A DNA stretch of 64,000 nucleotides from Laetmonice hystrix (lineage: Eukaryota): assembly GCA_965235115.1 (NCBI GenBank), contig OZ249444.1, forward strand, positions 6,200,001 through 6,264,000, in the 5' to 3' direction. The notes under the pieces are model-generated. The model saw only the letters and a list, made by a program, of their open reading frames with translations, ran no database searches and was not told where the DNA came from. Position 1 is the stretch's first letter. Every line of letters starts with the position of its first letter. Of this stretch, positions 10,433-64,000 are shown piece by piece. The position numbers and the translations under genes were made by a program.

Positions 10433-11274
10433 GCCACAGTTAATACAACCAGGATTACAGTCGTACGTGGTCTGGTGGTCAGTGTGGTCATCACCAGACC
10501 CGAGTGTGGATAAAGGATGACCAGCCTTGACCACATCCTATAGGAACGGATGGTGACTGAGAGCAATACCGTGGGAGCAGGGTGAAACTGTACATCATCA
10601 AACTGAAGTGTGGTCGTCGTCCCATGATCAGGCTGACGCTGAGCAGTGGGGTGTGATAAGAACGTAGCTCCCACCATCTTGTACCAGGGGGTCAGTTAGT
10701 TACCCCCACCCCCACGCCCGATTCCACCCCGCCTCTGCCTGCGAGGTTTATGTTTTCCCAGTGGCACCAGCTGGGGATTTCTTTGAACCAGCCGCCCCAT
10801 GATATTGTTGCCATCATCCACGTGTCCCTGTGGAGTATCGTCGCTGGGCTGTGAACCGGCTCCTGGCGCTGGTGTCGGAGTCTCGTGTCGGGACCGTCCG
10901 TGGTCAGCGCAGGCAGTGGCAATCCTAGCACGCTTATTACACACGTCCGTCATCACCATAAATGTCCACCGGCCAAATTGACATCGGTCATTGTTATTAG
11001 TGCCGCCAGCAATGCCATCAAATTTTGATGTGTTTTCGTGGTCTGTGGTTGTTGAAATACCTGCAAATCTGTTATATCTGAGGCAGCCATTCCTTATATG
11101 CAACGAAGCTGAAAATTCCTCAGCACAAAATCTACTTTGAATATGGGTCTAGTGCATTGCATGAGTGCTGTAAAATTTCAAAAGAAAAATTCATTTACAT
11201 GTAGTTGCGCCCATACCAGTGGTGTGTTTGCCGGAGTAAAAGTGACATAGGGAAAAAATTGTACGTAGTTTAAA

Positions 11275-14200
11275 ATGTATGAGGCGAGTGACTTGAGTCG
11301 ACATGCTGGGGGTCAGAATAACAGTTTTTCTGATGCAAATAGCAGCAGTCACGACATACGAAACTGTGGCTACAGTTCAGGGTATGCCCCCAGTGGGATG
11401 AATCGTTACGGGGTAACCTCTGAGGGCGCCGGTGAAGGCAGGATGAGGGCGGGGAGGCCAGGAGAGGGCGGCCCGGGTAGGATGGAGCACCCGGCCGTAT
11501 ACAGCCGGCCCCCGCTGCCACTGCCCCACCAGAGACAGGACCCTCTGCCATATCAGTACCCCAGTCCCCACGGCAAGAACACATACAATGGTAACTACAG
11601 TTACCACGACCAACCCCCAAACGGACCACTCCCGAGCCCTGTCCACTCCGGAGGGTACCCTGGAGGTCGCGGCAGGCCAGACGGTCACATAGACGATAGT
11701 CACAGGTGTAGTAGTCAACCGGCGCCGTCGCCCAGGGCCCAGAGGTCGGACCAGTATCATGGCTCGCCCGGTAAGACCGCTGCCGCCTACCGGCCGACTC
11801 AGCTCCCATACCGCGGGGACGGAGGTCCTCCACCCAGGGTCCCAGTGAGGCCAAGCGAGGAGATGTACAGCCCAGGGATCCCACCCGGCATTCCGAGCCC
11901 GTCTCCCCGACAGTTCCAGTCCCAAGGCGAGCCGCAATATTGGCCACTCACAGGTCGGGCATCCAGTCCACATGGTAGCAATAGCAGACTTTCAGGGCCA
12001 TCTACACCAAGTCCACACGGCAGCATGACCAGGCTCTCCAACCCACCCAGCCCAATGGGTAGTGGTCATAGACTCCCCAGCCCAGCCAATGCCAGCTTGG
12101 CTTACCACCCGTCCAGTCCACACAGGCCTGTTGCTGCCTTAGGAAGTCCACACAGTCCATCAGGACACGGTAACCAGTTCGCCAACGTGTTCAATTCAGT
12201 TTCAGCTGTTCGGAGACCAGCAAGCCCAGCTGGGTCCCAGAACAGTTCTCACAGTAGCCAACACCAAGGACTCACATCTAGTAGCCCAGTGGGTTCACCC
12301 TCACAAAGACTAGTGAACCAACACGTAGAGGAATCCCACGGCCCTTCCATGACACCAGGCCCATGGTACAACCCTCAGAGTGCCCCTGGCCCATACGCCC
12401 TCAGCCAGGGAAGGTCTCCACGAGGGCCCCTACCAGGAGGACAAAGTCCCTCCGAGGGGCTTTACGCGCGAGTCGGTCAATACGAGGGACAATACCGGTT
12501 GAATGCTGACTCCCCGTCTGCCCAGAGCAGATCGCCGAGGTCGCCCAATGGCGTCTACATCCACGAAGGAAATTTCCCGCGGACCCCAAGTCACCCAGAC
12601 TTACGGGAAGGTTCATTTCGTGCTGCTCCCAGTCAGTCGAGTCTGGCTGGCCCTGGGCTCCCTGGGCTCCCTGGGCAACCTGCAAGAAGTGGAAGCCTAT
12701 CTAGTCTCAGCAGGGACCACACGAGCCCGTCTGCTGGTCAGTCGGGCTTTCCTGATGGACCTTACCATCGATTACCCAACTCACGGGATCTTCAGGGCAG
12801 ACAGTTCGACATCTCTTCAAGTCAGTCCAACCTTCGCGATAATCAGTACAGACAACAACCTGCTAGTTACCAAGGCAATAGCAGCGGAGTAACCAACGGG
12901 TCAGGGGCTCCGGAGGGACTCTGTAATGTAAGTCCAGGACAGGTGAAAGATTTGCATAATGCAGGAAACTGTCATCCTAACAGAGCACCAAATTACTCTG
13001 ATGTAAAAGGACAAAAGATTAAAGGTGAGCGTAGTCCCAATGACATGAACTTTAGCAGAGTACCGAGCAATTATAGTCTCGATGAAGGACATTATATTAA
13101 TAGAGCTCTAGGCCACCCCGGTCTCAATGAAGGACAATACAGTAGAGCACCAAGCCATCCTAGTCTCAATGAAGGACATTATGTTAGAGCTCCAAGCCAT
13201 CCTGGTCTCAATGAAGGACATTATAGGAGAGCGCCAAGCCATTCTAGTCTCAGTGAAGGACACTATGATAGAGAATCAAGCCATCCTAATCTCGGCGAAG
13301 GATATTATAGTAGGACACCAAACCATCCTAGTCTAAATGAAGTACAGTATAGTAGAGCACCAAGTAATTCAAATCTCAGTGGAGAACAGTTCAGCAAAGC
13401 ACCAAGTCATCCTAGTCTATACGAAGGACAACATAGTAGGGCACCGAGCCATCTCAGTCCAACTGATCAATTAAATAGAGCGCCAAGCCAACCAAGTTTC
13501 AACAAAGGTCAGATAAGTAGAGCGCCGGGTCATGATAAAAGAACTTTAAGCCAATCTAATGTAACTGACGAACACCTTAACAGAACAGCTAGTTATACAA
13601 CTTTGAATGAAGGACATTCCCAACAGAATATTGAAATTTTTCATGACCTCGGGGGCGGTCCAAATGAGCAGTACGAAGGAGTCACAAATGGTGTCGACAC
13701 TTCTGAGGTCCCACATCGGCCACCCGGAGACGAGAGTGAGCCACTCGGAGATAGAAACTCAGCCACATCTGACGTAGCTGTGGCGTCCAGCGACTTGTAC
13801 AGACCTCAGTCTCGCAACACTCCGGAGGGTGGCGCCAGTGTGTCAGATCCCCAAGGAAGACCCCCTGTCGTCAGATCTAGAGCGGGAAGTCCCTCTGGGC
13901 CACCGCCGCCTCCTCCATCACATCCTCCAGTCACAGTGCCCGTGTTGTCACAGCAACGTCAGGAGACGATCGAGGTGGACGCTCCGCCCGCTGTGCCACC
14001 TCTCCCGTCCGCCTCCTCCTCCTGCCGCTCGGCGCCGCTGCACACTCAGCACAAGCCTCCAGTGCCGCCGCCCTATTCGTATCAGGCCAAGCAGAGACAG
14101 AAGCAGCCGTCGCTGCTGTCGTATCCAACAAGCTCGCAGGTACACTCAGCAGAATCCGTCCCGCCACCGCCGCTGTCTCAGCCGTCGCGGCACGGCACGT

Positions 14201-14288
14201 CGCTCGCACCACGTCAGTCGGTCAGCAGCCATCAACGCGAGCGACCAGCCGCCAGGTACAATCGACACTACTACTACGATACTAACAG
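11275..14288 (+). CDS. Giant candidate alternative first exon, 1004-aa Ser/Pro/Gly/His-rich disordered region
   Basis: aaaATG start, 3-kb uninterrupted ORF with diverged internal protein repeats, donor AAC AG|gtacgt in phase 2. The ORF otherwise runs on to a stop at 14370. Confidence 0.75.
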
Positions 14289-14796
14289 GTACGTAACCAC
14301 AGCAGCGGCGGCATCCAGCCGCTTTCCCAAGCTGCTGACGTTGATATTTCAGGGGTATTTTCAGCAATGAGGGGGAGGGAGGGGGGGAGCCACCCACCTG
14401 AGTTAGGAGCCGAGGATTGAGTGGGTTGATATCGCTGCTGTTGAAGCAGCTGGTAGAGAGAGATGTTGGTCCGGGATCGCTGAGACTGCCTCAGTGTACA
14501 TGGGTTAAAATGTATACCGGCCACACACAGTGCCAGGCGTGGATGGATACACAGTGGGGAGCTAGACCACTTGGTGTGTATTGCCTTAATTAGCCCTGAC
14601 AGATGTGTGTTAATTGTATGCAATTGTTCTAATTGCTACAAATTCAATTTGGATGATCCTGGAGGAATATAGCTGTGTGAATACCGGTAGCGGCAAAGCA
14701 AGATTCGTGGCTCTACTGCTGAAGCTACTCCTGCAGGTGTTGGCCTAGGAAACAGCCGGGTGGTGGATTAAGCTGTTGAATGGCTGTTGCGGCCTG

Positions 14797-36260: not shown

Positions 36261-37008
36261 GTGATTTGGTGATACTTGTAGAGAGACCAGGGGACATGAG
36301 CCTGATGACGACATTCACCACATTCCTAACGAGCGTAGCCACCCCGTGGTTGTCATAGCGACCTCCTTCCATGGCGCGAGGTTGTTGGTCGAGGAGAGCC
36401 GGGGTGGATTGGATCATGTCATGTAGGACAGGCTCATCATGTCGGCCCACGTTATCTACGATTGTAATAGACCTGTCATGTACAGATCAGGCCGATCGCG
36501 GGCCTAGTAATGCTCTATACAGCCCCGCCCTGTTGGTGTCCGACAGGGTCGGGTGTGCAGGCCACAAAACGGTACATTCCATTAGAAGCCAGCGCCGGGG
36601 TCGGAAGGTCACACGTAGGATTAAATTGCTGTCAACCCACAACTTGACCCCCATAAATACACCCCTTGTACGTATACAAGACACCAACTATCCATACCCA
36701 GGCACCCAAACCAAGGTGTATGGTACTCGAGCCCACTTGGATAAACCTGGTTGGGTTTACCATAGTCTGTCAAATAGTCATCTTTGTTTTCAGGTTGCTA
36801 AGAGAGGCTCGCAGCTATTGGAGTTGGTGACGATACATCGGAACCTCGTCTTGACATCATTTATAGCATAGTTTCACCTCAGAAATAGGTCAAGGCAATT
36901 GTTGGATAAACGCCAATGGTATTGTCCCTTTTGACCCACATTGATGATCCGAGATGCTATATATAAGACATTGTCCAATAGTGAGAGTTTGCATTGTTGT
37001 ACTTGCAG

Positions 37009-54310: not shown

Positions 54311-54413
54311 AGTACAACCGATTTGAGTCGAAGATACACGATCTCCGCGAACAGATGATGAACACAAGTACTGGAAGCCTGCGCACGACGCAGAAACGTA
54401 CACTCTACGTCAG
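54311..54413 (+). CDS. dlg1: dlg exon, PDZ3 alpha3 helix and linker [35 protein letters not shown]
   Basis: tttgcag|AG...AG|gtacga, 103 nt, phase 1 to 2; matches the DLG linker. Confidence 0.95.
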
Positions 54414-54757: not shown

Positions 54758-54934
54758 GGCTCTCTTTGACTACGACCCGACCAAGGACAGCGGGCTGCCG
54801 AGTAAGGGATTGGCGTTCAAATATGGCGACATTTTGCATGTGACAAATGCCAGCGACGATGAGTGGTGGCAAGCACGAAAACTGCTGCCCGAGGGCGAGG
54901 ATGAGGGACTGGCCATCATCCCCAGCAAACGGAG
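54758..54934 (+). CDS. dlg1: dlg exon, SH3 [59 protein letters not shown]
   Basis: tttgcag|G...GGAG|gtaaaa, 177 nt, phase 2 to 2; ALFDY and WW SH3 motifs. Confidence 0.96.
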
Positions 54935-55265: not shown

Positions 55266-55350
55266 GGTTGAAAGAAAAGAACGAGCACGTCTCAAAAATG
55301 TCAAGTTCCATGGCAAAGGGGCGGGCACAGAGAAAGGTGGACCCATTGAT
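55266..55350 (+). CDS. dlg1: dlg exon, HOOK helix VERKERARLKNVKFHGKGAGTEKGGPID
   Basis: ttccag|G...GAT|gtaagt, 85 nt, phase 2 to 0. Confidence 0.93.
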
Positions 55351-55750: not shown

Positions 55751-55859
55751 CCCATGGCCACAGATAAAAGGAAGAAGAACTTTTCGTTCAGTCGGAAGTT
55801 CCCGTTCATGAAGAGTAAGGACCAGAGTGGCAGTGAGGACGCTATCAGTGCTGACGAAC
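55751..55859 (+). CDS. dlg1: dlg exon, I3-like insert PMATDKRKKNFSFSRKFPFMKSKDQSGSEDAISADE
   Basis: ttgcag|CCC...GAA C|gtaagt, 109 nt, phase 0 to 1; DKRKKN..FSRKFPF resembles the DLG1 I3 (protein 4.1-binding) insert. Confidence 0.92.
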
Positions 55860-56136: not shown

Positions 56137-56163
56137 CTTGGACCTCAGTAGCGATGAATCCCA
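56137..56163 (+). CDS. dlg1: Candidate HOOK microexon, 27, 15 or 12 nt depending on acceptor (start 56137, 56149 or 56152)
   Basis: Donor CCCA|gtgagt. All three possible AG acceptors give 3n lengths with no stop in phase 1 (PWTSVAMNP, LAMNP, PMNP). Confidence 0.55.
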
Positions 56164-56892
56164 GTGAGTACAAGTCACACACTGAAACTTGAAATAATTC
56201 ACAGAAAGTTATGACACAAAACACACAGAATGTAGACTACAATACTGCACGTAAACACTTCTACAGGTTTGTTGGTGACAGCACACTGCCAAATCGTACA
56301 TTTCACCCCAAAATCCTACTTTTATCTCATGTGTGTAAAAGATTTAGGCTAGTTAAGTCGCACACATAAATAGTACATAATGCTAGACCGAGGATTAGAT
56401 GCAACCAAATTCAAGTCATATTCTCTTTATTTGTTGTATCTTTCCTAAATGAGGCTGTGGATTTAATTTCTGACCTTGTGGCTCGAAACACGTCACCGAC
56501 GGTACAGAGAGCACCGAGTCATAAATTGAATACAGTATGGGGGACTAATTACCTAGTGATGGAACAAATAACGAAGAATATGACTGTCTTTTTTTGGCCT
56601 CGTAACTAGACTGCTTTAGATTACTGTTATGAACCAACATTTAGAAATATTATAAACCTCTAGAATGTTCCCTTGTAACTCTTGAAGGGAGACTTACAGA
56701 ATTTGTCGTCAAGCTGATGTACACAAGCAGTTGTGAAGAGAGTGGGTAGGGTTATGTCTTTTTCATGGTTTCATAGACAGTTTAGTACTAGCCTGTCTAC
56801 ATCTTGTTGACTTAGGAGCTTTATACTTCTACGTGAAAGATGAGATTTTATATTTTTCTTACACATATTTAACTTCCATTTTCCTGTAACAG

Positions 56893-56898
56893 TGGAGG
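56893..56898 (+). CDS. dlg1: Candidate 6-nt microexon TGGAGG (copy 1)
   Basis: tttaacttccattttcctgtaacag|TGGAGG|gtgagt: branch-like tttaac, pyrimidine tract, strong donor, frame-preserving. Confidence 0.65.
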
Positions 56899-58060
56899 GT
56901 GAGTATATTTTAGCAGTTAATATATATTATATATTTTTTCCAAGTCTTTTACAGTATTTTGTCAAGGGCAAAGGGTGTACTTGATTTTCATTTCTTTGTA
57001 GCTAATCAGGAACGGGTTTCAATAAATCGAAACACGACGTTCGAGTTTTGTCATATTTGGTGCTGAAAAAGGCTCTTTTTTTAAATCTATGGTCAAGAGA
57101 TCTTTGTTACTGATGTATTTCGTAACAGTGAGTCTAATTGAAACTGCCGCCTTTTGATGTGCAAATATGAGGAAAGTCCACAGAAATGGGAGTCGGGATG
57201 ATCTGTGCTGGTGTGGGTTAAGGATGTTTTTAGTACTAGTAATTTAGTATTAGACTCTAGGGTCAGTGTACAGGCCCTGTGGTTGAGGTACTGGTAAGGA
57301 CTACAGATGAAGATACGAGACGTAGTCTCACAATATCTAACTGAGATTTTAATTACGGTGCCGTATTAATCCAAAGGAGTTTTATTTTTGTTTATAGACT
57401 TTTTAGTTTATTTTTTTTTATCATTTCCAATCGGTGTTGTACAAGGATGATCAATTTTGTCAATGTTCAAAGATCAAGTCCACATCTTTCCACCATGGAC
57501 GACCAGGCCCATTTGACCAGTTTGGTCAGAGATTTACCTGCAAAATACTCTTCCCTAAAAGTGAAAAAATAAAAATATTATGCAGGTCTTTCGGATAGCT
57601 TTTTATTAATTCCTTGAAAAGATCGAATAGTAGTGTCAATCCTTAAGGGACGCGTTACACCAGACCTGTTAAAGGACGCAAGGTTGACCTGACATTGACC
57701 CGAAGTTGGCATTCTTCACTATTCTCTGCCAAGCAAGCAGCACCTTTTCGAGGTTCTACCGTACTATTGTACATATTTCCCATTGGTGACGAGACGGAGG
57801 TATTGGTGCTAAGCCCAAATCACAAAGTTGTCCTAAATTGGCTTGTGGCTGTACATGATATTGATAATGATATATTTACCAGTAAGGATAATCAACATAC
57901 ATGTATGTACATGTATAAAACTACATACCCTTACCCTGTCCATAAACACCTAGTTAGACCACCCGTAGATGTCTACTTCCATCTCATGTATATGTCGCCC
58001 AAGGTGGTGTATACGTAAATATCCTGTCCGTATGGTGTGCAGTGAATGAGTAGGAATTAA

Positions 58061-58160
58061 TTGCCCATGAAGTAAGTAAGAACAATGCCCATGAAGTAAT
58101 GAGACCATTGCCCATGAATTAATGAGACCATTGCCCATGAAGTAATGAGACCATTGCCCA
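58061..58160. repeat. 24-bp tandem repeat, about 4 copies, abutting the 21-nt microexon acceptor
   Basis: attgcccatgaagtaatgagacc-type unit. Confidence 0.88.
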
Positions 58161-58166
58161 TTTCAG

Positions 58167-58187
58167 CTGAGAATGACGGCCCTAAAG
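58167..58187 (+). CDS. dlg1: Candidate 21-nt microexon (A)ENDGPK
   Basis: ttgcccatttcag|CTGAGAATGACGGCCCTAAAG|gtacga, phase 1 to 1. Confidence 0.65.
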
Positions 58188-58671
58188 GTACGAGTATGTG
58201 GTCGTGGTGTGGTTAAGTCTCGGTGACCCTCCTCATGGCTAACAAACAGCATGGTCCATGTTAAGATCTGTCTTAATGTTAAGTGTTTCCACTAATCCCC
58301 ATTGAGAGTGGGGACGGGTTGAATAATGACAAACATAATTATGTCGGTTATCTGATATTGTCTTTATGGGTTGGTAAGGTGGAGGGATTGTACTGTGTGA
58401 TGGAAGCTTGTCCTTTTCAAAATTGTTAGAACACGTCCCAAGAGATTTCCCTGAAGTTCATAACATTTTTAACTCCAGTGATGGCTTCCATAACACTAAC
58501 GTAGTTTATTTGGGATTTGAGAGACAAAGAGTCAAACTAGTTGAAAGAGATAATATATTTGATGCCACAGCACCGAAATATTGGTTGAAAGTACGCGTAA
58601 AGGTTCTGGGTAGGGAAACAATTGCCATTCATCCAAACTTATGTGTGGTTACATTTGCTTGCGCCACCTAG

Positions 58672-58677
58672 TGGAGG
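58672..58677 (+). CDS. dlg1: Candidate 6-nt microexon TGGAGG (copy 2)
   Basis: tttgcttgcgccacctag|TGGAGG|gtaagt: consensus donor and upstream TGC motifs. Overlaps a CTCF-like motif, which is an alternative explanation. Confidence 0.5.
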
Positions 58678-59606
58678 GTAAGTAATGTATCAACAAGTAC
58701 TGGAACACACTTATTACAAATAACCTTGTAGGCTTTTAGCAGTTGGCCTCACACGACTCAGACTGTATATTATTTGCTTCACTAATACTACTTTAATTTC
58801 ATGTGTGTCGTCTTATATATAATATTACACTGATGTGATGATTGTCCGTAGTGCTTAGTTTCGTAATTTATGGGATGAGGCTGCAATGATTGATAGACAC
58901 AGACGTGTCCATAGCGACACAATGCACTGTTTCATCTGGGTTATTTTGGTCTTAGTGAACACTACTTAAACGTGCACTTTACAATGACAGCTCCAACTTT
59001 CTTTTAGAAATTATAATTTGTTGCCTGTTTTTGCCTCACACATCCGGCACCGTTCTGATAGCTTCTTGTTGCGTCTACACATTAGACCAGTTGATGTTGC
59101 ACGGTTGGGGGTTTAGGTAGATTTGATTACATCAGTGTGATTGAAGCATGTCTACCGGCCAGGTGTACGTGCGCCAGTTGTTTGTCACGTCATCGGTGGC
59201 GTCTCGTCCTGTGACTACGTCATTCTGACGTCATTAACGTATTTCCTGTTCTGATGTCGTCTGCTGCCCTGTCGCGGGACAGTAGAGTATTATGTCAATA
59301 TAACTGTTAAATCTGTCATTTAGATGCCCGAAATCATATTGTTAGTATGTAGGTAAACTAGCAGTGATAGCATTCATCGTCCTTATGATATTCTGTATTA
59401 TAGCTAACTCCTTTATGCTAACTTAACCAAGTCCTCATCTGGTCACATGGTATCAGAATAGCTAAGGTCATTGGATGTCACTATGGCTACGAAGGACGTT
59501 TAATCTCAGTCTATATTATGAATAGAAGAACTTGGACCACATGATTTGGTTGGAGTCGGTCGTTAGAGCCGGGGTTCTATTTTTGGTATTTTCCTATTTT
59601 TTATAG

Positions 59607-59645
59607 ATGCGATGGCGCCACCTCCTAATGCTACCATGACAACAG
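59607..59645 (+). CDS. dlg1: Candidate 39-nt cassette exon DAMAPPPNATMTT
   Basis: ttttcctattttttatag|AT...ACA G|gtatac, long pyrimidine tract, phase 1 to 1, no stop. Confidence 0.65.
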
Positions 59646-60989
59646 GTATACACTCACATCAACACATTACTTGTTACTCATTGGCTAGTTATTTCAGGGT
59701 GTTGTCATGGTGATCTGTGCCCGGGGTAACGTTGGGGCGGCTTTTCGACCCCCAAGGCCCCTGGGAAACAGACCATTCATTGTTATCCTAGATGTGTACA
59801 GAGTGACGTAAACCGTTGTTTGATGCTCATGTTCTAGCATCAAGTTTGGTTTCGTTTTTCTGGTCCGTTCTGTTGGCATGGCGACCATGATCGCCATTAA
59901 CAGAGTGATGAAAGGAAGGCAGTATCTAAATGAAGTAGTGATGTCACTCGATGCTTCCGAACTCACTGGTGTAGTGGAAATTGGAAAAGAAAAATTGGAA
60001 ATTAAAGAAAGCTTTGCGGCACTTTTGTTGTATCTTAAATCTGTTGTAAGATCTATAGAGAAGAACCAAGAAATCCGAATTGATTTATAACTGTGACTGT
60101 TGATATAGAAAACGTTAAAATATGCCAAAAGAGTGTACATGTACATGAACATTTTTGGTGTGTTAAAAAAAAATTTGAATATTATCTGTTCAAGATAATT
60201 ATTTTTTTATTTATATATAGTAGGGATTTGATTACTTTGAGAGTGAATGCCACATTCATTTAGATGCCGGGTTTGGTTGGATCTGGCCAGGTCATTCGTG
60301 AAGGCACTCGTCCTTGACCCCTCGACCTTGACCCCTGAGAGAAGGTCAGGGACCGGAGTTGTCTGACTGGTGCTGCCCTCTATCTGCACGCGAGTTCTCA
60401 AGTGGTGCACACGTTAACATTGTTAACAGCAGTTTGTTGTTTGAAGACACAACAGCATGAAGCCATTGCCTAAAGATCTTGTGAAAGTTAAGGTTCCCCC
60501 CCCCCCACCACCACCAACTGTTTCTACCAATTCTGCATGGCATTGCCCCCCCCCCGCCCCCAGTCGAGGGGCATTCGGATGATTTTGTGGCTAGTTACAT
60601 AATCTCTGTATCTTCCAAGTAGTCAAAAATTGAAGTTCTACAATTGTGGGTGGAAAGTGTATGTTTATGGTTACAGATGTGTGTTTACCCTAGATACTAC
60701 TGTACTGTGATATAATATACCTGTCTAATATGAACAAAGATTAGTACCAAGTAACAGATGTTAGATTGCTTTTTTTTTTATCTCCCAATGGCACCTTGCC
60801 TCCATGTAACATCATGTCGAATTGTAAAATTTTAGATTAATTCTTATAGAGATAGACGTTTCCCAAGTAGATGGTCAGTTATAAAATTTTCATTGCAGAC
60901 TCCGAGGACAGTATTGGATAATGATAATATTTTTTTTCACATTTTTTCTTGTTTCGATGCCTAATTCGTTTCTTATTTTCTCACAACAG

Positions 60990-61037
60990 CAGCAGAAGAC
61001 ATAGTCCTCTCATATGAGGCCGTTGTTCAGCAGGAAT
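60990..61037 (+). CDS. dlg1: dlg exon AAEDIVLSYEAVVQQE (HOOK end, SH3 beta-F strand)
   Basis: caacag|CAGCAG...GAA T|gtaagt; VLSYE.V.QQE resembles DLG1. Tandem CAG acceptors. Confidence 0.93.
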
Positions 61038-61329: not shown

Positions 61330-62798
61330 AGTTTACCAATGAGATTGGTTATGTGTTATGTGGTTTATATGACAATGTGAGAATCTTCCCCTCCTGACCG
61401 GTTGTGTTTTCCTACAGTACAGAGATTGGTTACGTGTTATGTGGTTGATATGAGAATTACTAACAGTGTCCCCCCCCCCCCCCCCCGATCGGTTGTCTTT
61501 TCCTACAGTACAGATTGATATTACCAATGAGATTGGTTATGTGTTACATGTGACAATTACTAACAGTGTCCCCCTGACCGGTTGTGTTTTCCTACAGTAA
61601 AGTATGATATGAGAATTACTAACAGTGTCCCCCTGACCGGTTGTGTTTTCCTACAGTAAAGTATGATATGAGAATTACTAACAGTGTCCCCCCTGACCGG
61701 TTGTGTTTTCCTACAGTAAAGTATGATATGAGAATTACTAACAGTGTCCCCCTGACCGGTTGTGTTTTCCTACAGTACAGATTGATATTACCAATGAGAT
61801 TGGTTATGTGTTAGATGTGACAATTACTAACAGTGTCCCCCCTGACCGGTTGTGTTTTCCTACAGTACAGATTGATATTACCAATGAGATTGGTTATGTG
61901 TTAGATGTGACAATTACTAACAGTGTCCCCCCTGACCGGTTGTGTTTTCCTACAGTAAAGTATGATATGAGAATTACTAACAGTGTCCCCCTGACCGGTT
62001 GTGTTTTCCTACAGTACAGATTGATATTACCAATGAGATTGGTTATGTGTTAGATGTGACAATTACTAACAGTGTCCCCCCTGACCGGTTGTGTTTTCCT
62101 ACAGTACAGATTGATATTACCAATGAGATTGGTTATGTGTTAGATGTGACAATTACTAACAGTGTCCCCCTGACCGGTTGTGTTTTCCTACAGTAAAGTA
62201 TGATATGAGAATTACTAACAGTGCCCCCCCTGACCGGTTGTGTTTTCCTACAGTACAGATTGATATTACCAATGAGATTGGTTATGTGTCAGATGTGACA
62301 ATTACTAACAGTGTCCCCCCTGACCGGTTGTGTTTTCCTACAGTAAAGTATGATATGAGAATTACTAACAGTGTCCCCCCTGACCGGTTGTGTTTTCCTA
62401 CAGTAAAGTATGATATGAGAATTACTAACAGTGTCCCCCCTGACCGGTTGTGTTTTCCTACAGTAAAGTATGATATGAGAATTACTAACAGTGTCCCCCT
62501 GACCGGCTGTGTTTTCCTACAGTACAGATTGATATTACCAATGAGATTGGTTATGTGTTAGATGTGACAATTACTAACAGTGTCCCCCTGACCGGTTGTG
62601 TTTTCCTACAGTAAAGTATGATATGAGAATTACTAACAGTGTCCCCTCTGACCGGTTGTGTTTTCCTACAGTAAAGTATGATATGAGAATTACTTACAGT
62701 GTCCCCCCTGACCGGTTGTGTTTTCCTACAGTAAAGTATGATATGAGAATTACTAACAGTGTCCCCCCTGACCGGTTGTGTTTTCCTACAGTAAAGTA
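61330..62798 (+). repeat. Minisatellite of 60/61-bp and about 90-bp units, each holding the GK-exon 3' splice site
   Basis: 20 hand-counted copies of ctgaccggttgtgttttcctacagta; the last one is the real acceptor. Confidence 0.95.
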
Positions 62799-62893
62799 CA
62801 CACGCCCAGTCATCATCCTCGGACCACTCAAGGACCGCATAAATGACGACCTCATCTCGGAGTTCCCGGACAAGTTCGGCAGCTGTGTTCCAC
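62792..62893 (+). CDS. dlg1: dlg exon, GK start [34 protein letters not shown]
   Basis: ttttcctacag|TA...CCA C|gtaagt, 102 nt, phase 1 to 1. Confidence 0.96.
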
Positions 62894-64000
62894 GTAAGTA
62901 CCAACGGGAGGGCCGGAACGTTTAAAATTAAAAGTAAAAAAAGGATCTGGAATAGATATGGGGTGATAGATAAATTGAAAGTCGGCCCGGAATGACCTGC
63001 GTTTTTTGTTCATGAAAGGTTGTCATGATTTAAGACGACTTCCATCCTGATTCAAACTGGAATCACATAATTGAAAATCATAAATGTTAGCACAGTCCAA
63101 GAAAATCATTCCTTCTTACACAGCCTGGCGTGTTTGTCAACATTGAGCTAATATTACCCCCCAGAAAGAAGAATGGTTTAAATCTCTGTGTGACAAGTAT
63201 ACTTCTTTTCATCTCATTTTGTTGATTTCTTGTTTCTAGGCAAAAATCTGTCAGATAGTTATCCCAGGGGTAAACAAAAACAAAACAATGTTTTTTTTTT
63301 TGGCTGAAATTTGCTTCTGTTCCTTGGTTTTTAGCATTATAATTTACTTCCCCTTTGAATGATACTGGTTACTTGTTATAGAGGCTGGTACAAAGGAATG
63401 CATTTGGATTGAGTTACTAATTTTATTTTCATTTCTACAGTTCCTTTTCTGAATGACAAATGTATTTGAGAGCACAAAGGTTAAATTAAGACATTTTAGT
63501 TATCTTAGTAATTTACTTAATTAGACATTACAGCCCTTTAATCTTGTTTCTCTATATTTATTGATAATTGATCCTACTTTTGCCGAGTTGCTGTATTTTG
63601 AAGGTTGCCTTCAGATGTGACATTCCCACTCCTCACTGCCTATAATCTCGGAGCACATTCAATGTTCGGGCTGCACACCTTTAATAACACAAATTTATCG
63701 AAGTGCTTAACATGGCGCTTTAAATTTCTCGCCTTGGTTCTATTCCTGGAAATAAACCTTTAGAAAAATCTTTTTTATTAGGTTAATTTTGGAATTTAAT
63801 CTCTTGAGCATTGTTTCTTCGTTCTGCTCTGGTGCTGCTGTGTTGAGTTGACATTTTTGGCCTCAGTAACCCAGCTAGAAAGTGAAACTGATAGGAAGAC
63901 TAAATGGAATGTTAGATGTTGAGGTAGGACAAAGACAATATTGATAGGTTAGATTTGGCAGAAACATGAGAAAGTGCTGTATGTTGGGCCAGAATGTGTC

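What the first reader, a model, noticed from the sequence alone, without database searches (positions are those of the whole stretch)
56137..59645. Chain of five frame-preserving micro/cassette exons in the HOOK region
Exons of 27/15/12, 6, 21, 6 and 39 nt all keep phase 1 with no stop. Joined, they read ...ADE-PWTSVAMNP-ME-AENDGPK-VE-DAMAPPPNATMTT-AAEDIVLSYE. Independent inclusion gives dozens of linker lengths in the segment known to control SH3-GK conformation, analogous to vertebrate I2/I3/I4/I5 but apparently richer. Two exons have upstream TGC motifs typical of SRRM/eMIC-dependent neural microexons. Standard annotation would probably miss these.
Basis: partly seen in the sequence, partly recalled or inferred. 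Interest (0 to 1): 0.8.

Follow-up and report, generated by a model that had tools for sequence, protein, structure and literature searches.

The report
Tiny cassette exons in annelid Dlg
The intron between the HOOK exon and the first guanylate-kinase exon of a polychaete worm's discs-large (Dlg) gene holds several very small in-frame exon candidates; one is a conserved annelid exon and two are a duplicated 6-base unit, so this looks like the invertebrate version of the known alternative splicing of the Dlg linker, but no RNA data were available to show that they are used.

Summary
All five segments exist as described: AG…GT flanks, phase 1, no stop. All 32 combinations stay in frame and give 18 linker lengths. 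Splice signals alone do not prove them. A 5-kb intron yields 5-9 such candidates by chance, and only the top three exceed expectation.

Independent evidence differs by exon:
- **21-nt exon (58167-58187).** It encodes ENDGPK, the counterpart of the NDSPTK segment in Platynereis Dlg cDNA and five other annelid transcripts. Near-certain.
- **Two 6-nt units.** They share the core YAG-TGGAGG-GTRAGTA. That 16-mer has only 8 copies in the 627-Mb genome, and the flanks of the two units are unlike. This suggests a duplicated microexon kept by selection. Likely real.
- **39-nt exon.** Strong splice sites, and it lies where Platynereis and another annelid carry an extra cassette. Probable.
- **27-nt exon.** The nearest relative has a candidate of the same length, phase and position, but the sequence similarity is not significant. 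Possible.

No RNA run of this species was found, so inclusion, independence and neural (eMIC) regulation are untested. The upstream TGC motifs are not above chance. RefSeq mollusc models already include a 6-nt exon at this site, so this is a new member of a known kind.

The parts
55751..55859 (+). HOOK exon (homologue of vertebrate insertion I3: basic 4.1/calmodulin-binding stretch plus acidic tail). It ends in phase 1, carrying C.
   Evidence: It is 81% identical in nucleotides to L001. Its C-terminal 26 residues (FSFSRKFPFMKSKDQSGSEDAISADE) are identical to Platynereis Dlg P0202.
56137..56163 (+). 27-nt candidate cassette (P)WTSVAMNP. It has internal alternative acceptors that would give 15 or 12 nt.
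   Evidence: Splice score rank 7 of 282. The closest relative L001 has a 27-nt, phase-1, stop-free candidate with a GTGAGTA donor 284 nt after its HOOK exon, against 277 nt here. Nucleotide similarity is not significant.
56893..56898 (+). 6-nt candidate microexon TGGAGG (x-Glu), first copy. The conserved core is 56890-56905, CAGTGGAGGGTGAGTA.
   Evidence: Best splice score in the intron. The pattern occurs only twice in the window and 8 times in the genome.
58060..58161 (.). 23-nt minisatellite (4.4 copies) that runs up to the acceptor of the 21-nt exon and supplies its upstream TGC.
   Evidence: Indel variants and doubled contig depth are seen here in DNA runs.
58167..58187 (+). 21-nt exon (P/A)ENDGPK, the orthologue of the annelid 'NDSPTK' HOOK exon.
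   Evidence: The motif is unique in all + frames of the 64-kb window. It aligns with Platynereis cDNA, L007, L008, P0281, P0315 and P0325.
58672..58677 (+). 6-nt candidate microexon TGGAGG, second copy. The core is 58669-58684, TAGTGGAGGGTAAGTA. Two TGC lie between the pyrimidine tract and the AG.
59607..59645 (+). 39-nt candidate cassette DAMAPPPNATMTT.
   Evidence: Second-best splice score. It is open only in the required frame. It lies where Platynereis (19 aa) and L008 (9 aa) have an extra cassette between NDSPTK and the GK exon.
60990..61037 (+). First GK-side exon, (x)AAEDIVLSYEAVVQQE. It encodes the strand that completes the SH3 fold.

Best explanation
This is the alternatively spliced I4/I5-type part of the HOOK linker of the single Dlg1-type gene of a polychaete. 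Between the basic/acidic HOOK exon and the exon encoding the IVLSYE strand lie several symmetric phase-1 mini-exons.

- **21-nt exon.** It is the annelid-wide NDSPTK exon and is probably included in the main isoform (…SADE-PENDGPK-AAEDIVLSYE).
- **Two TGGAGG units.** They are a duplicated 6-nt microexon. Each adds a hydrophobic residue plus Glu.
- **39-nt exon.** It is a lineage-specific Pro/Thr-rich cassette at the position where other annelids also have one.
- **27-nt exon.** It is a possible further cassette.

Inclusion changes the length and charge of the disordered linker directly before the strand that docks onto the SH3 domain. By inference from vertebrate SAP97/PSD-95 work, this tunes the intramolecular SH3-GK assembly and the access of ligands to HOOK.

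Shown here: the sequence anatomy, the homology of the 21-nt exon, and the non-random pair of 6-nt units. Inferred: actual inclusion, alternative use, regulation and the effect on conformation.
For: - **Anatomy and frame**.
- **21-nt exon.** The peptide motif occurs once in the window, at this exon. It aligns with six annelid transcripts, including the flanks ADE…K-A-[AG]-E-[ED]-x-V-L-S-Y-E.
- **6-nt units.** The only two YAG-N6-GTRAGT sites in 128 kb of both strands lie in this intron and have the same hexamer. The 16-mer occurs 8 times in 627 Mb; the other six copies trace to three origins. The flanks of the two units are not alike, so only the splice sites plus the exon are kept.
- **Positive control.** The oyster contig L005 has ttgtag|CTGAAG|gtaaat 215 nt after its HOOK exon. 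RefSeq oyster and scallop isoforms differ by exactly 'PE' there. P0042 reads ADE-LE-E.
- **39-nt exon.** Second-best splice score and a cassette at the same position in Platynereis and L008.
- **27-nt exon.** L001 has a candidate of the same length, phase and offset.
- **Variants.** None of the fully listed variants of the alternative haplotype falls in the exons or their splice sites. About 2.7 were expected, P about 0.07.
- **Gene copy.** The genome has a single Dlg1-type gene and the intron is single copy.
Against: - No RNA evidence from this species.
- None of the annelid transcripts seen contains a counterpart of the 27-nt or the 6-nt exons.
- The 27-nt exon is only about 33% identical without gaps to the L001 candidate (my hand comparison of the two 27-mers), while neighbouring exons are 81-88% identical; local alignment of L001's downstream intron against this intron found nothing above shuffles.
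- The number of splice-flanked in-frame candidates in the intron is about what chance gives for the weaker ones.
- The orthologous 11.6-kb intron of a more distant annelid (L087) shows no such exons.
- Similarity of the 39-nt cassette to the Platynereis and L008 cassettes is weak.
Confidence: 0.6

Rival explanations
1. Only the 21-nt exon is a real exon, the constitutive annelid NDSPTK exon. The 27-, 39- and both 6-nt segments are pseudo-exons that a reader looking for AG…GT in-frame segments would find in any 5-kb intron.
For: Chance gives 5-9 such candidates per 5.1 kb. Other equally scoring candidates exist, such as 56688-56741 and 59698-59709. No annelid transcript shows the other four. 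There is no RNA evidence.
Against: Two identical YAG-TGGAGG-GTRAGTA cores 1.8 kb apart with unlike flanks are very unlikely by chance, about 1e-5. There are three candidates with a score of at least 5.7 against 0.5-1.3 expected. L001 has a positional match for the 27-nt exon.
Confidence: 0.25
2. The two TGGAGG units are not coding exons. They are intronic splicing elements, such as decoy or 'zero-productive' splice-site pairs, that help or regulate removal of the 5-kb intron or the choice of the neighbouring exons.
For: Only the splice-site core is conserved between the two copies. 6-nt exons are hard to define by exon definition.
Against: Joining the upstream exon to TGGAGG does not rebuild a 5' splice site, so classical recursive splicing does not apply. 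Molluscs demonstrably include a 6-nt exon at this very position. Both units keep the frame, and each adds x-Glu as in the mollusc PE and the P0042 LE.
Confidence: 0.1
3. None of the five is used; the gene splices 55859 directly to 60990.
For: Paralvinella and Lamellibrachia gene models join HOOK almost directly to the GK exon. L087 has no intermediate exon.
Against: The ENDGPK exon matches a motif present in six annelid transcripts, with correct phase and splice sites.
Confidence: 0.05

Closest known systems
Vertebrate DLG1/SAP97 HOOK insertions I2, I3, I4, I5 (McLaughlin et al. 2002, as summarised in PMC9307800)
   Same: Both sit between SH3 and GK. The basic exon here equals I3. The cassettes lie between I3 and the …LSYE exon, as I5 and I4 do. 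They are phase-1 symmetric cassettes: vertebrate representatives P0111 and P0118 differ by a 14-aa I5 with a junction codon change.
   Different: The sequences of the cassettes are unrelated to I5 (SNASDSESSYR). The units here are much smaller (6-39 nt) and more numerous. Their use is unproven.
RefSeq/Gnomon isoforms of mollusc Dlg (Crassostrea virginica X1-X4, C. gigas X6, Mizuhopecten, Ylistrum)
   Same: Isoforms differ by a 6-nt exon (ADE-PE-G… versus ADE-R-G…) directly after the HOOK exon, and by a second small cassette (GADSEASYRG). The genomic 6-nt exon is seen in L005.
   Different: The hexamer differs (CTGAAG against TGGAGG). Molluscs have a single copy, while here there are two. The mollusc second cassette is I5-like, and the annelid one is NDSPTK.
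Platynereis dumerilii Dlg cDNA (UniProt A0A2H5BFB1; P0202) and other annelid transcripts (L007, L008, P0281, P0315, P0325)
   Same: The HOOK exon ending is the same (…SGSEDAISADE). An NDSPTK-type mini-exon follows, and in two species a further cassette comes before …GEEPVLSYE.
   Different: None shows a 27-nt or a 6-nt insert. The motif here is ENDGPK, with S changed to G, T lost and a PE codon pair in front.
SRRM3/4 (eMIC)-dependent neuronal microexons
   Same: Lengths are 6-27 nt. Four of the five have strong GTRAGT donors. In two, UGC lies between the pyrimidine tract and the AG, which is the architecture described in bioRxiv 10.1101/2024.09.17.613571. The genome has one SRRM_C match over Pfam's cut-off.
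   Different: Neural inclusion and SRRM dependence are untested. UGC enrichment is not significant. Three acceptors have no UGC.

Membership tests
Dlg/MAGUK HOOK-region alternative cassette exons (I4/I5 position) | Lies between the basic I3-like HOOK exon and the exon encoding the …LSYE strand of a Dlg1-4-type gene | tested here: met
   Exon map of the window and alignment with Dlg proteins.
Dlg/MAGUK HOOK-region alternative cassette exons (I4/I5 position) | Symmetric (phase 1-1) exons, so that any combination keeps the frame | tested here: met
   All 32 combinations are open.
Dlg/MAGUK HOOK-region alternative cassette exons (I4/I5 position) | Present in mature mRNA | tested here: inconclusive
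   No RNA run of the species was found. The 21-nt exon is supported through orthologous transcripts only. The others have no transcript support.
Dlg/MAGUK HOOK-region alternative cassette exons (I4/I5 position) | Alternative: both inclusion and skipping isoforms exist | not testable with these tools
   This needs RNA from the species. In relatives, isoforms with and without small cassettes exist.
SRRM3/4 (eMIC)-dependent neural microexons | Length 3-27 nt | tested here: met
   6, 6, 21 and 27 nt. The 39-nt exon falls outside this range.
SRRM3/4 (eMIC)-dependent neural microexons | UGC motif between the pyrimidine tract or branch point and the AG | tested here: inconclusive
   Present at two of five acceptors. 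There are 3 motifs against about 1.3 expected. One of them is part of a minisatellite unit.
SRRM3/4 (eMIC)-dependent neural microexons | Regulator with an eMIC-bearing C-terminus encoded in the genome | tested here: inconclusive
   One SRRM_C (PF15230) match of 29.9 bits against a cut-off of 27, covering 27 of 67 positions, at G000:C18:20459758-20459838. The gene was not examined.
SRRM3/4 (eMIC)-dependent neural microexons | Neuron-specific, SRRM-dependent inclusion | not testable with these tools
   No RNA data.

The most novel reading that the evidence does not exclude
All five segments are genuine, independently used cassettes, including a tandemly duplicated 6-nt microexon whose two copies keep an identical 16-nt splice-site-plus-exon core. 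This would give an annelid Dlg a combinatorial set of up to 18 HOOK linker lengths under neuronal eMIC control, a denser microexon array than is described for any MAGUK.
Probability: 0.15. Interest if true: 0.6.

Novelty: new member of a known kind. Interest (0 to 1): 0.4.

Why it matters
The HOOK linker controls how the SH3 and GK domains of Dlg-family scaffolds pack against each other and which partners (4.1 proteins, calmodulin) can bind. Vertebrates vary it by alternative insertions.

This locus, together with the mollusc and annelid transcripts gathered here, suggests that varying this linker by very small phase-1 cassettes at the same intron position may be shared by lophotrochozoans and vertebrates, while the cassettes themselves turn over between lineages.

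The pair of identical 6-nt units is a clean natural case for asking how a 6-nt exon is defined and duplicated. The practical value is modest. It gives concrete exon coordinates for annotation and for an RT-PCR test.

Tried and rejected
- **RNA evidence.** Two searches for sequencing runs, one with the intron-rich stretch and one with an exon-dense stretch, found only three runs of one sample that hold the introns, so they are DNA. Laying them gave haplotype variants only. The depletion of variants in the exons is weak (P about 0.07), and 103 variants were not listed.
- **Protein searches.** The representatives search with the SH3 exon returned mostly genomic exon fragments. A search with P0042's HOOK region found almost nothing. 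A search with P0091 turned out to be centred on mites. Only the third search, with Platynereis, gave the lophotrochozoan set. This species' own protein was not flagged among the 120 hits listed.
- **Comparative genomics.** L001, the closest relative, ends 590 nt after the HOOK exon. Its intron does not align significantly with ours. L003, L004 and L087, from a more distant annelid, have an 11.6-kb intron with a retroelement and no counterpart exons.
- **P0042 contig.** Its DNA could not be fetched, so the codons of its 'LE' are unknown.
- **tblastn.** HOOK inserts from 199 homologues run against the intron gave only noise and no I5-like cassette.
- **Recursive splicing.** Rejected for the 6-nt units because the exon junction would not recreate a GT donor.
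- **TGC motifs.** Rejected as evidence for eMIC control because they are not above chance.
- **Repeats.** The intron is not a dispersed repeat.
Full report
**What is there.** The window carries the 3' half of a discs-large (Dlg1-type MAGUK) gene on the + strand.
- PDZ3 exons lie near 36990 and 52821.
- A linker exon is at 54311-54413, the SH3 exon at 54758-54934, and a small exon at 55267-55350.
- The HOOK exon is 55751-55859. It reads …KRKKNFSFSRKFPFMKSKDQSGSEDAISADE and ends with one carried base, C.
- A 5,130-nt intron follows.
- Next comes an exon at 60990-61037, AAEDIVLSYEAVVQQE, which begins the GK side. Further GK exons lie from 62788 on.

This fits, because the last 26 residues of the HOOK exon are identical to Platynereis dumerilii Dlg. 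The genome has one Dlg1-type gene, and the intron is single copy.

**The observation.** All five segments exist as described:
- 56137-56163 (27 nt)
- 56893-56898 (6 nt)
- 58167-58187 (21 nt)
- 58672-58677 (6 nt)
- 59607-59645 (39 nt)

Each is flanked by AG and GT and is a multiple of three. Each is open in the phase set by the HOOK exon. Every one of the 32 inclusion combinations stays in frame, giving 18 different lengths.

**Chance.** The intron contains 282 AG…GT, multiple-of-3, stop-free segments of 60 nt or less. With a simple donor and acceptor weight matrix, the five rank 1 (first 6-nt), 2 (39-nt), 3 (second 6-nt), 7 (27-nt) and 9 (21-nt).

I estimated chance rates from both strands of the whole window and from 300 Markov simulations. 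Per 5.1 kb, chance gives:
- 5-9 candidates at or above the score of the weakest of the five;
- 2.6-4 at the score of the 27-nt exon;
- 0.5-1.3 at the score of the third best, where 3 are observed.

So the chain is not established by splice signals. Each exon needs other evidence.

**No RNA.** Two run searches returned only three runs of one sample that hold intron and exon alike, so they are DNA. Laid on the stretch, they give contigs of a second haplotype. For three contigs every difference is listed. None falls in an exon or within 20 nt upstream or 6 nt downstream of one, where about 2.7 were expected (P about 0.07). This is weak support at best.

**The 21-nt exon is a conserved annelid exon.** Proteins and transcripts gathered with the Platynereis Dlg as query show what lies between …SADE and …(E)PVLSYE in annelids:

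| Source | Segment |
|---|---|
| Platynereis | QNDSPTK-GSLTAINENVTLPQPQPIP-AGE |
| L007/P0276 | LNESPSK-AGE |
| L008 | QNDSPTK-ASKLNDSET-GE |
| P0281 | LGDSPTK-LSGE |
| P0315 | PSTDSPTK-GTD |
| P0325 | …GVDSPTK-GGLGE |

The 21-nt exon reads (P/A)ENDGPK. The pattern [NTGSV][DE][SG]P[ST]?K occurs once in all three + frames of the 64-kb window, and that occurrence is exactly at this exon. With only this exon included, the protein reads …SADEPENDGPKAAEDIVLSYE, against …SADELNESPSKAGEEPVLSYE in L007. I regard this exon as real and probably part of the main isoform. Its acceptor is abutted by a 23-nt minisatellite (58060-58161), whose unit supplies the upstream TGC.

**The two 6-nt units are not a coincidence.** YAG-N6-GTRAGT occurs twice in the 128 kb of both strands of the window. 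Both occurrences are in this intron, on the sense strand, with the same hexamer TGGAGG.

The 16-mer YAGTGGAGGGTRAGTA occurs 8 times in the 627-Mb genome. The other six copies trace to three origins: a minisatellite on C1, a duplicated exon end on C5 and C13, and one site on C6. Two independent hits 1.8 kb apart have a chance probability of order 1e-5.

The flanks of the two units show no significant similarity. What is shared is just the 3' AG, the six bases and the donor. This is what an old duplication of a microexon under selection would leave.

A positive control comes from molluscs. The oyster-type contig L005 has ttgtag|CTGAAG|gtaaat 215 nt after its HOOK exon. RefSeq isoforms of Crassostrea, Mizuhopecten and Ylistrum differ by exactly ADE-PE-G… versus ADE-R-G…. 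P0042 reads ADE-LE-E…, the peptide TGGAGG would give after a carried C, but its DNA could not be fetched. I rate each unit as likely real (about 0.6-0.7 that at least one is used), although no annelid transcript in hand shows it.

**The 39-nt exon.** Three points favour it.
- It has the second-best splice score, with a long pyrimidine tract.
- It is open only in the required frame.
- It encodes a Pro/Thr-rich peptide suited to a disordered linker.

It also sits where Platynereis and L008 have an additional cassette. Sequence similarity to those is weak (N-x-x-x-T). I rate it probable, about 0.55.

**The 27-nt exon.** The nearest relative available is L001, a Logan contig. Its SH3 exon is 98% identical in protein, and its exons are 81-88% identical in DNA.
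- In favour: L001 has a 27-nt, phase-1, stop-free candidate with a GTGAGTA donor 284 nt after its HOOK exon, against 277 nt here. I saw no other GTRAGT in the 590 nt of L001 that are available (reading).
- Against: the two 27-mers are only about 33% identical without gaps (my hand comparison), and local alignment of L001's downstream intron against this intron found nothing above shuffles.

A gapped reading (S..M-[NQ]-P) is possible but post hoc. I rate it about 0.45.

**Mechanism (inferred).** In vertebrate SAP97/hDlg, the HOOK region is a disordered linker that carries insertions I2, I3, I4 and I5. I3 binds 4.1 proteins and calmodulin, and ligand binding to HOOK loosens the SH3-GK assembly (PMC9307800).

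The HOOK exon here is the I3 homologue. The cassettes lie at the I4/I5 position, directly before the IVLSYE strand. Vertebrate representatives with and without the 14-residue I5 show the same phase-1 design (P0111 versus P0118).

Adding 2 to 33 residues there should change the reach and charge of the tether between the basic/acidic HOOK core and the strand that completes the SH3 fold.

Regulation by an eMIC-type Srrm234 is possible but untested.
- UGC lies in the expected place at two acceptors.
- One SRRM_C match exists in the genome.
- However, the UGC count is not above chance.

**Comparison and novelty.** Alternative splicing of the Dlg HOOK linker is well known in vertebrates. Database models of molluscs already contain a 6-nt exon at this spot, and a cloned Platynereis cDNA contains the NDSPTK exon.

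The locus is therefore a new member of a known kind. Its unusual feature is the duplicated 6-nt unit, and possibly the number of cassettes.

Noticed in passing
window 11269-14367 (+): An uninterrupted 1033-codon open frame inside the Dlg locus, upstream of the PDZ3 exons. It is low-complexity and rich in Pro, Gly, Ser and Tyr, and has no Pfam match. It is far too long to be chance. It is either a giant alternative coding exon of Dlg or a nested gene.
   Followed up: partly
window 58060-58161: A 23-nt minisatellite (4.4 copies) ends 5 nt before the acceptor of the 21-nt exon. The DNA runs show indels at 58135 and 58141 and doubled contig depth there, so its copy number seems polymorphic.
   Followed up: partly
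window 61623-62922: A tandem array whose translated unit (…[20 protein letters not shown]…) runs straight into the GK exon [32 protein letters not shown]. The last unit reads …[15 protein letters not shown], so the repeat seems to include the acceptor and the first codons of the exon. This is the same theme as note s1-351911.
   Followed up: no
window 56456-56527: Contigs of all three DNA runs skip 70 nt here and carry AATTTC instead. This is an indel polymorphism or a haplotype difference in the intron.
   Followed up: no
L005 8215-8220 (Logan contig, oyster-like): The genomic copy of the mollusc 6-nt 'PE' microexon, ttgtag|CTGAAG|gtaaat, lies 215 nt after the HOOK exon. It matches the difference between RefSeq isoforms (ADE-PE-G versus ADE-R-G).
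   Followed up: yes
G000:C1:685954-686479 (L088): Three of the eight genomic copies of CAGTGGAGGGTGAGTA lie in a tandem repeat on the minus strand with successive spacings of 163 and 347 nt. Two more copies (C5:37633332 and C13:20090531) are the identical end of a duplicated coding exon, …ASLIGKTAVEG|gtaagta.
   Followed up: partly
L003 13038-14580 / L087 5739-7281: The orthologous HOOK-GK intron of a more distant annelid (ENA ERZ26052287) is 11.6 kb long and holds a reverse-transcriptase (RVT_1) element. Its GK exon starts CTGAAGAT…, so direct splicing gives …GLE-PEDLVLSYE.
   Followed up: partly
G000:C18:20459758-20459838 (L092): The single genomic match to Pfam SRRM_C (29.9 bits, cut-off 27). 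It is a candidate for the Srrm234/eMIC regulator of microexons in this worm.
   Followed up: no
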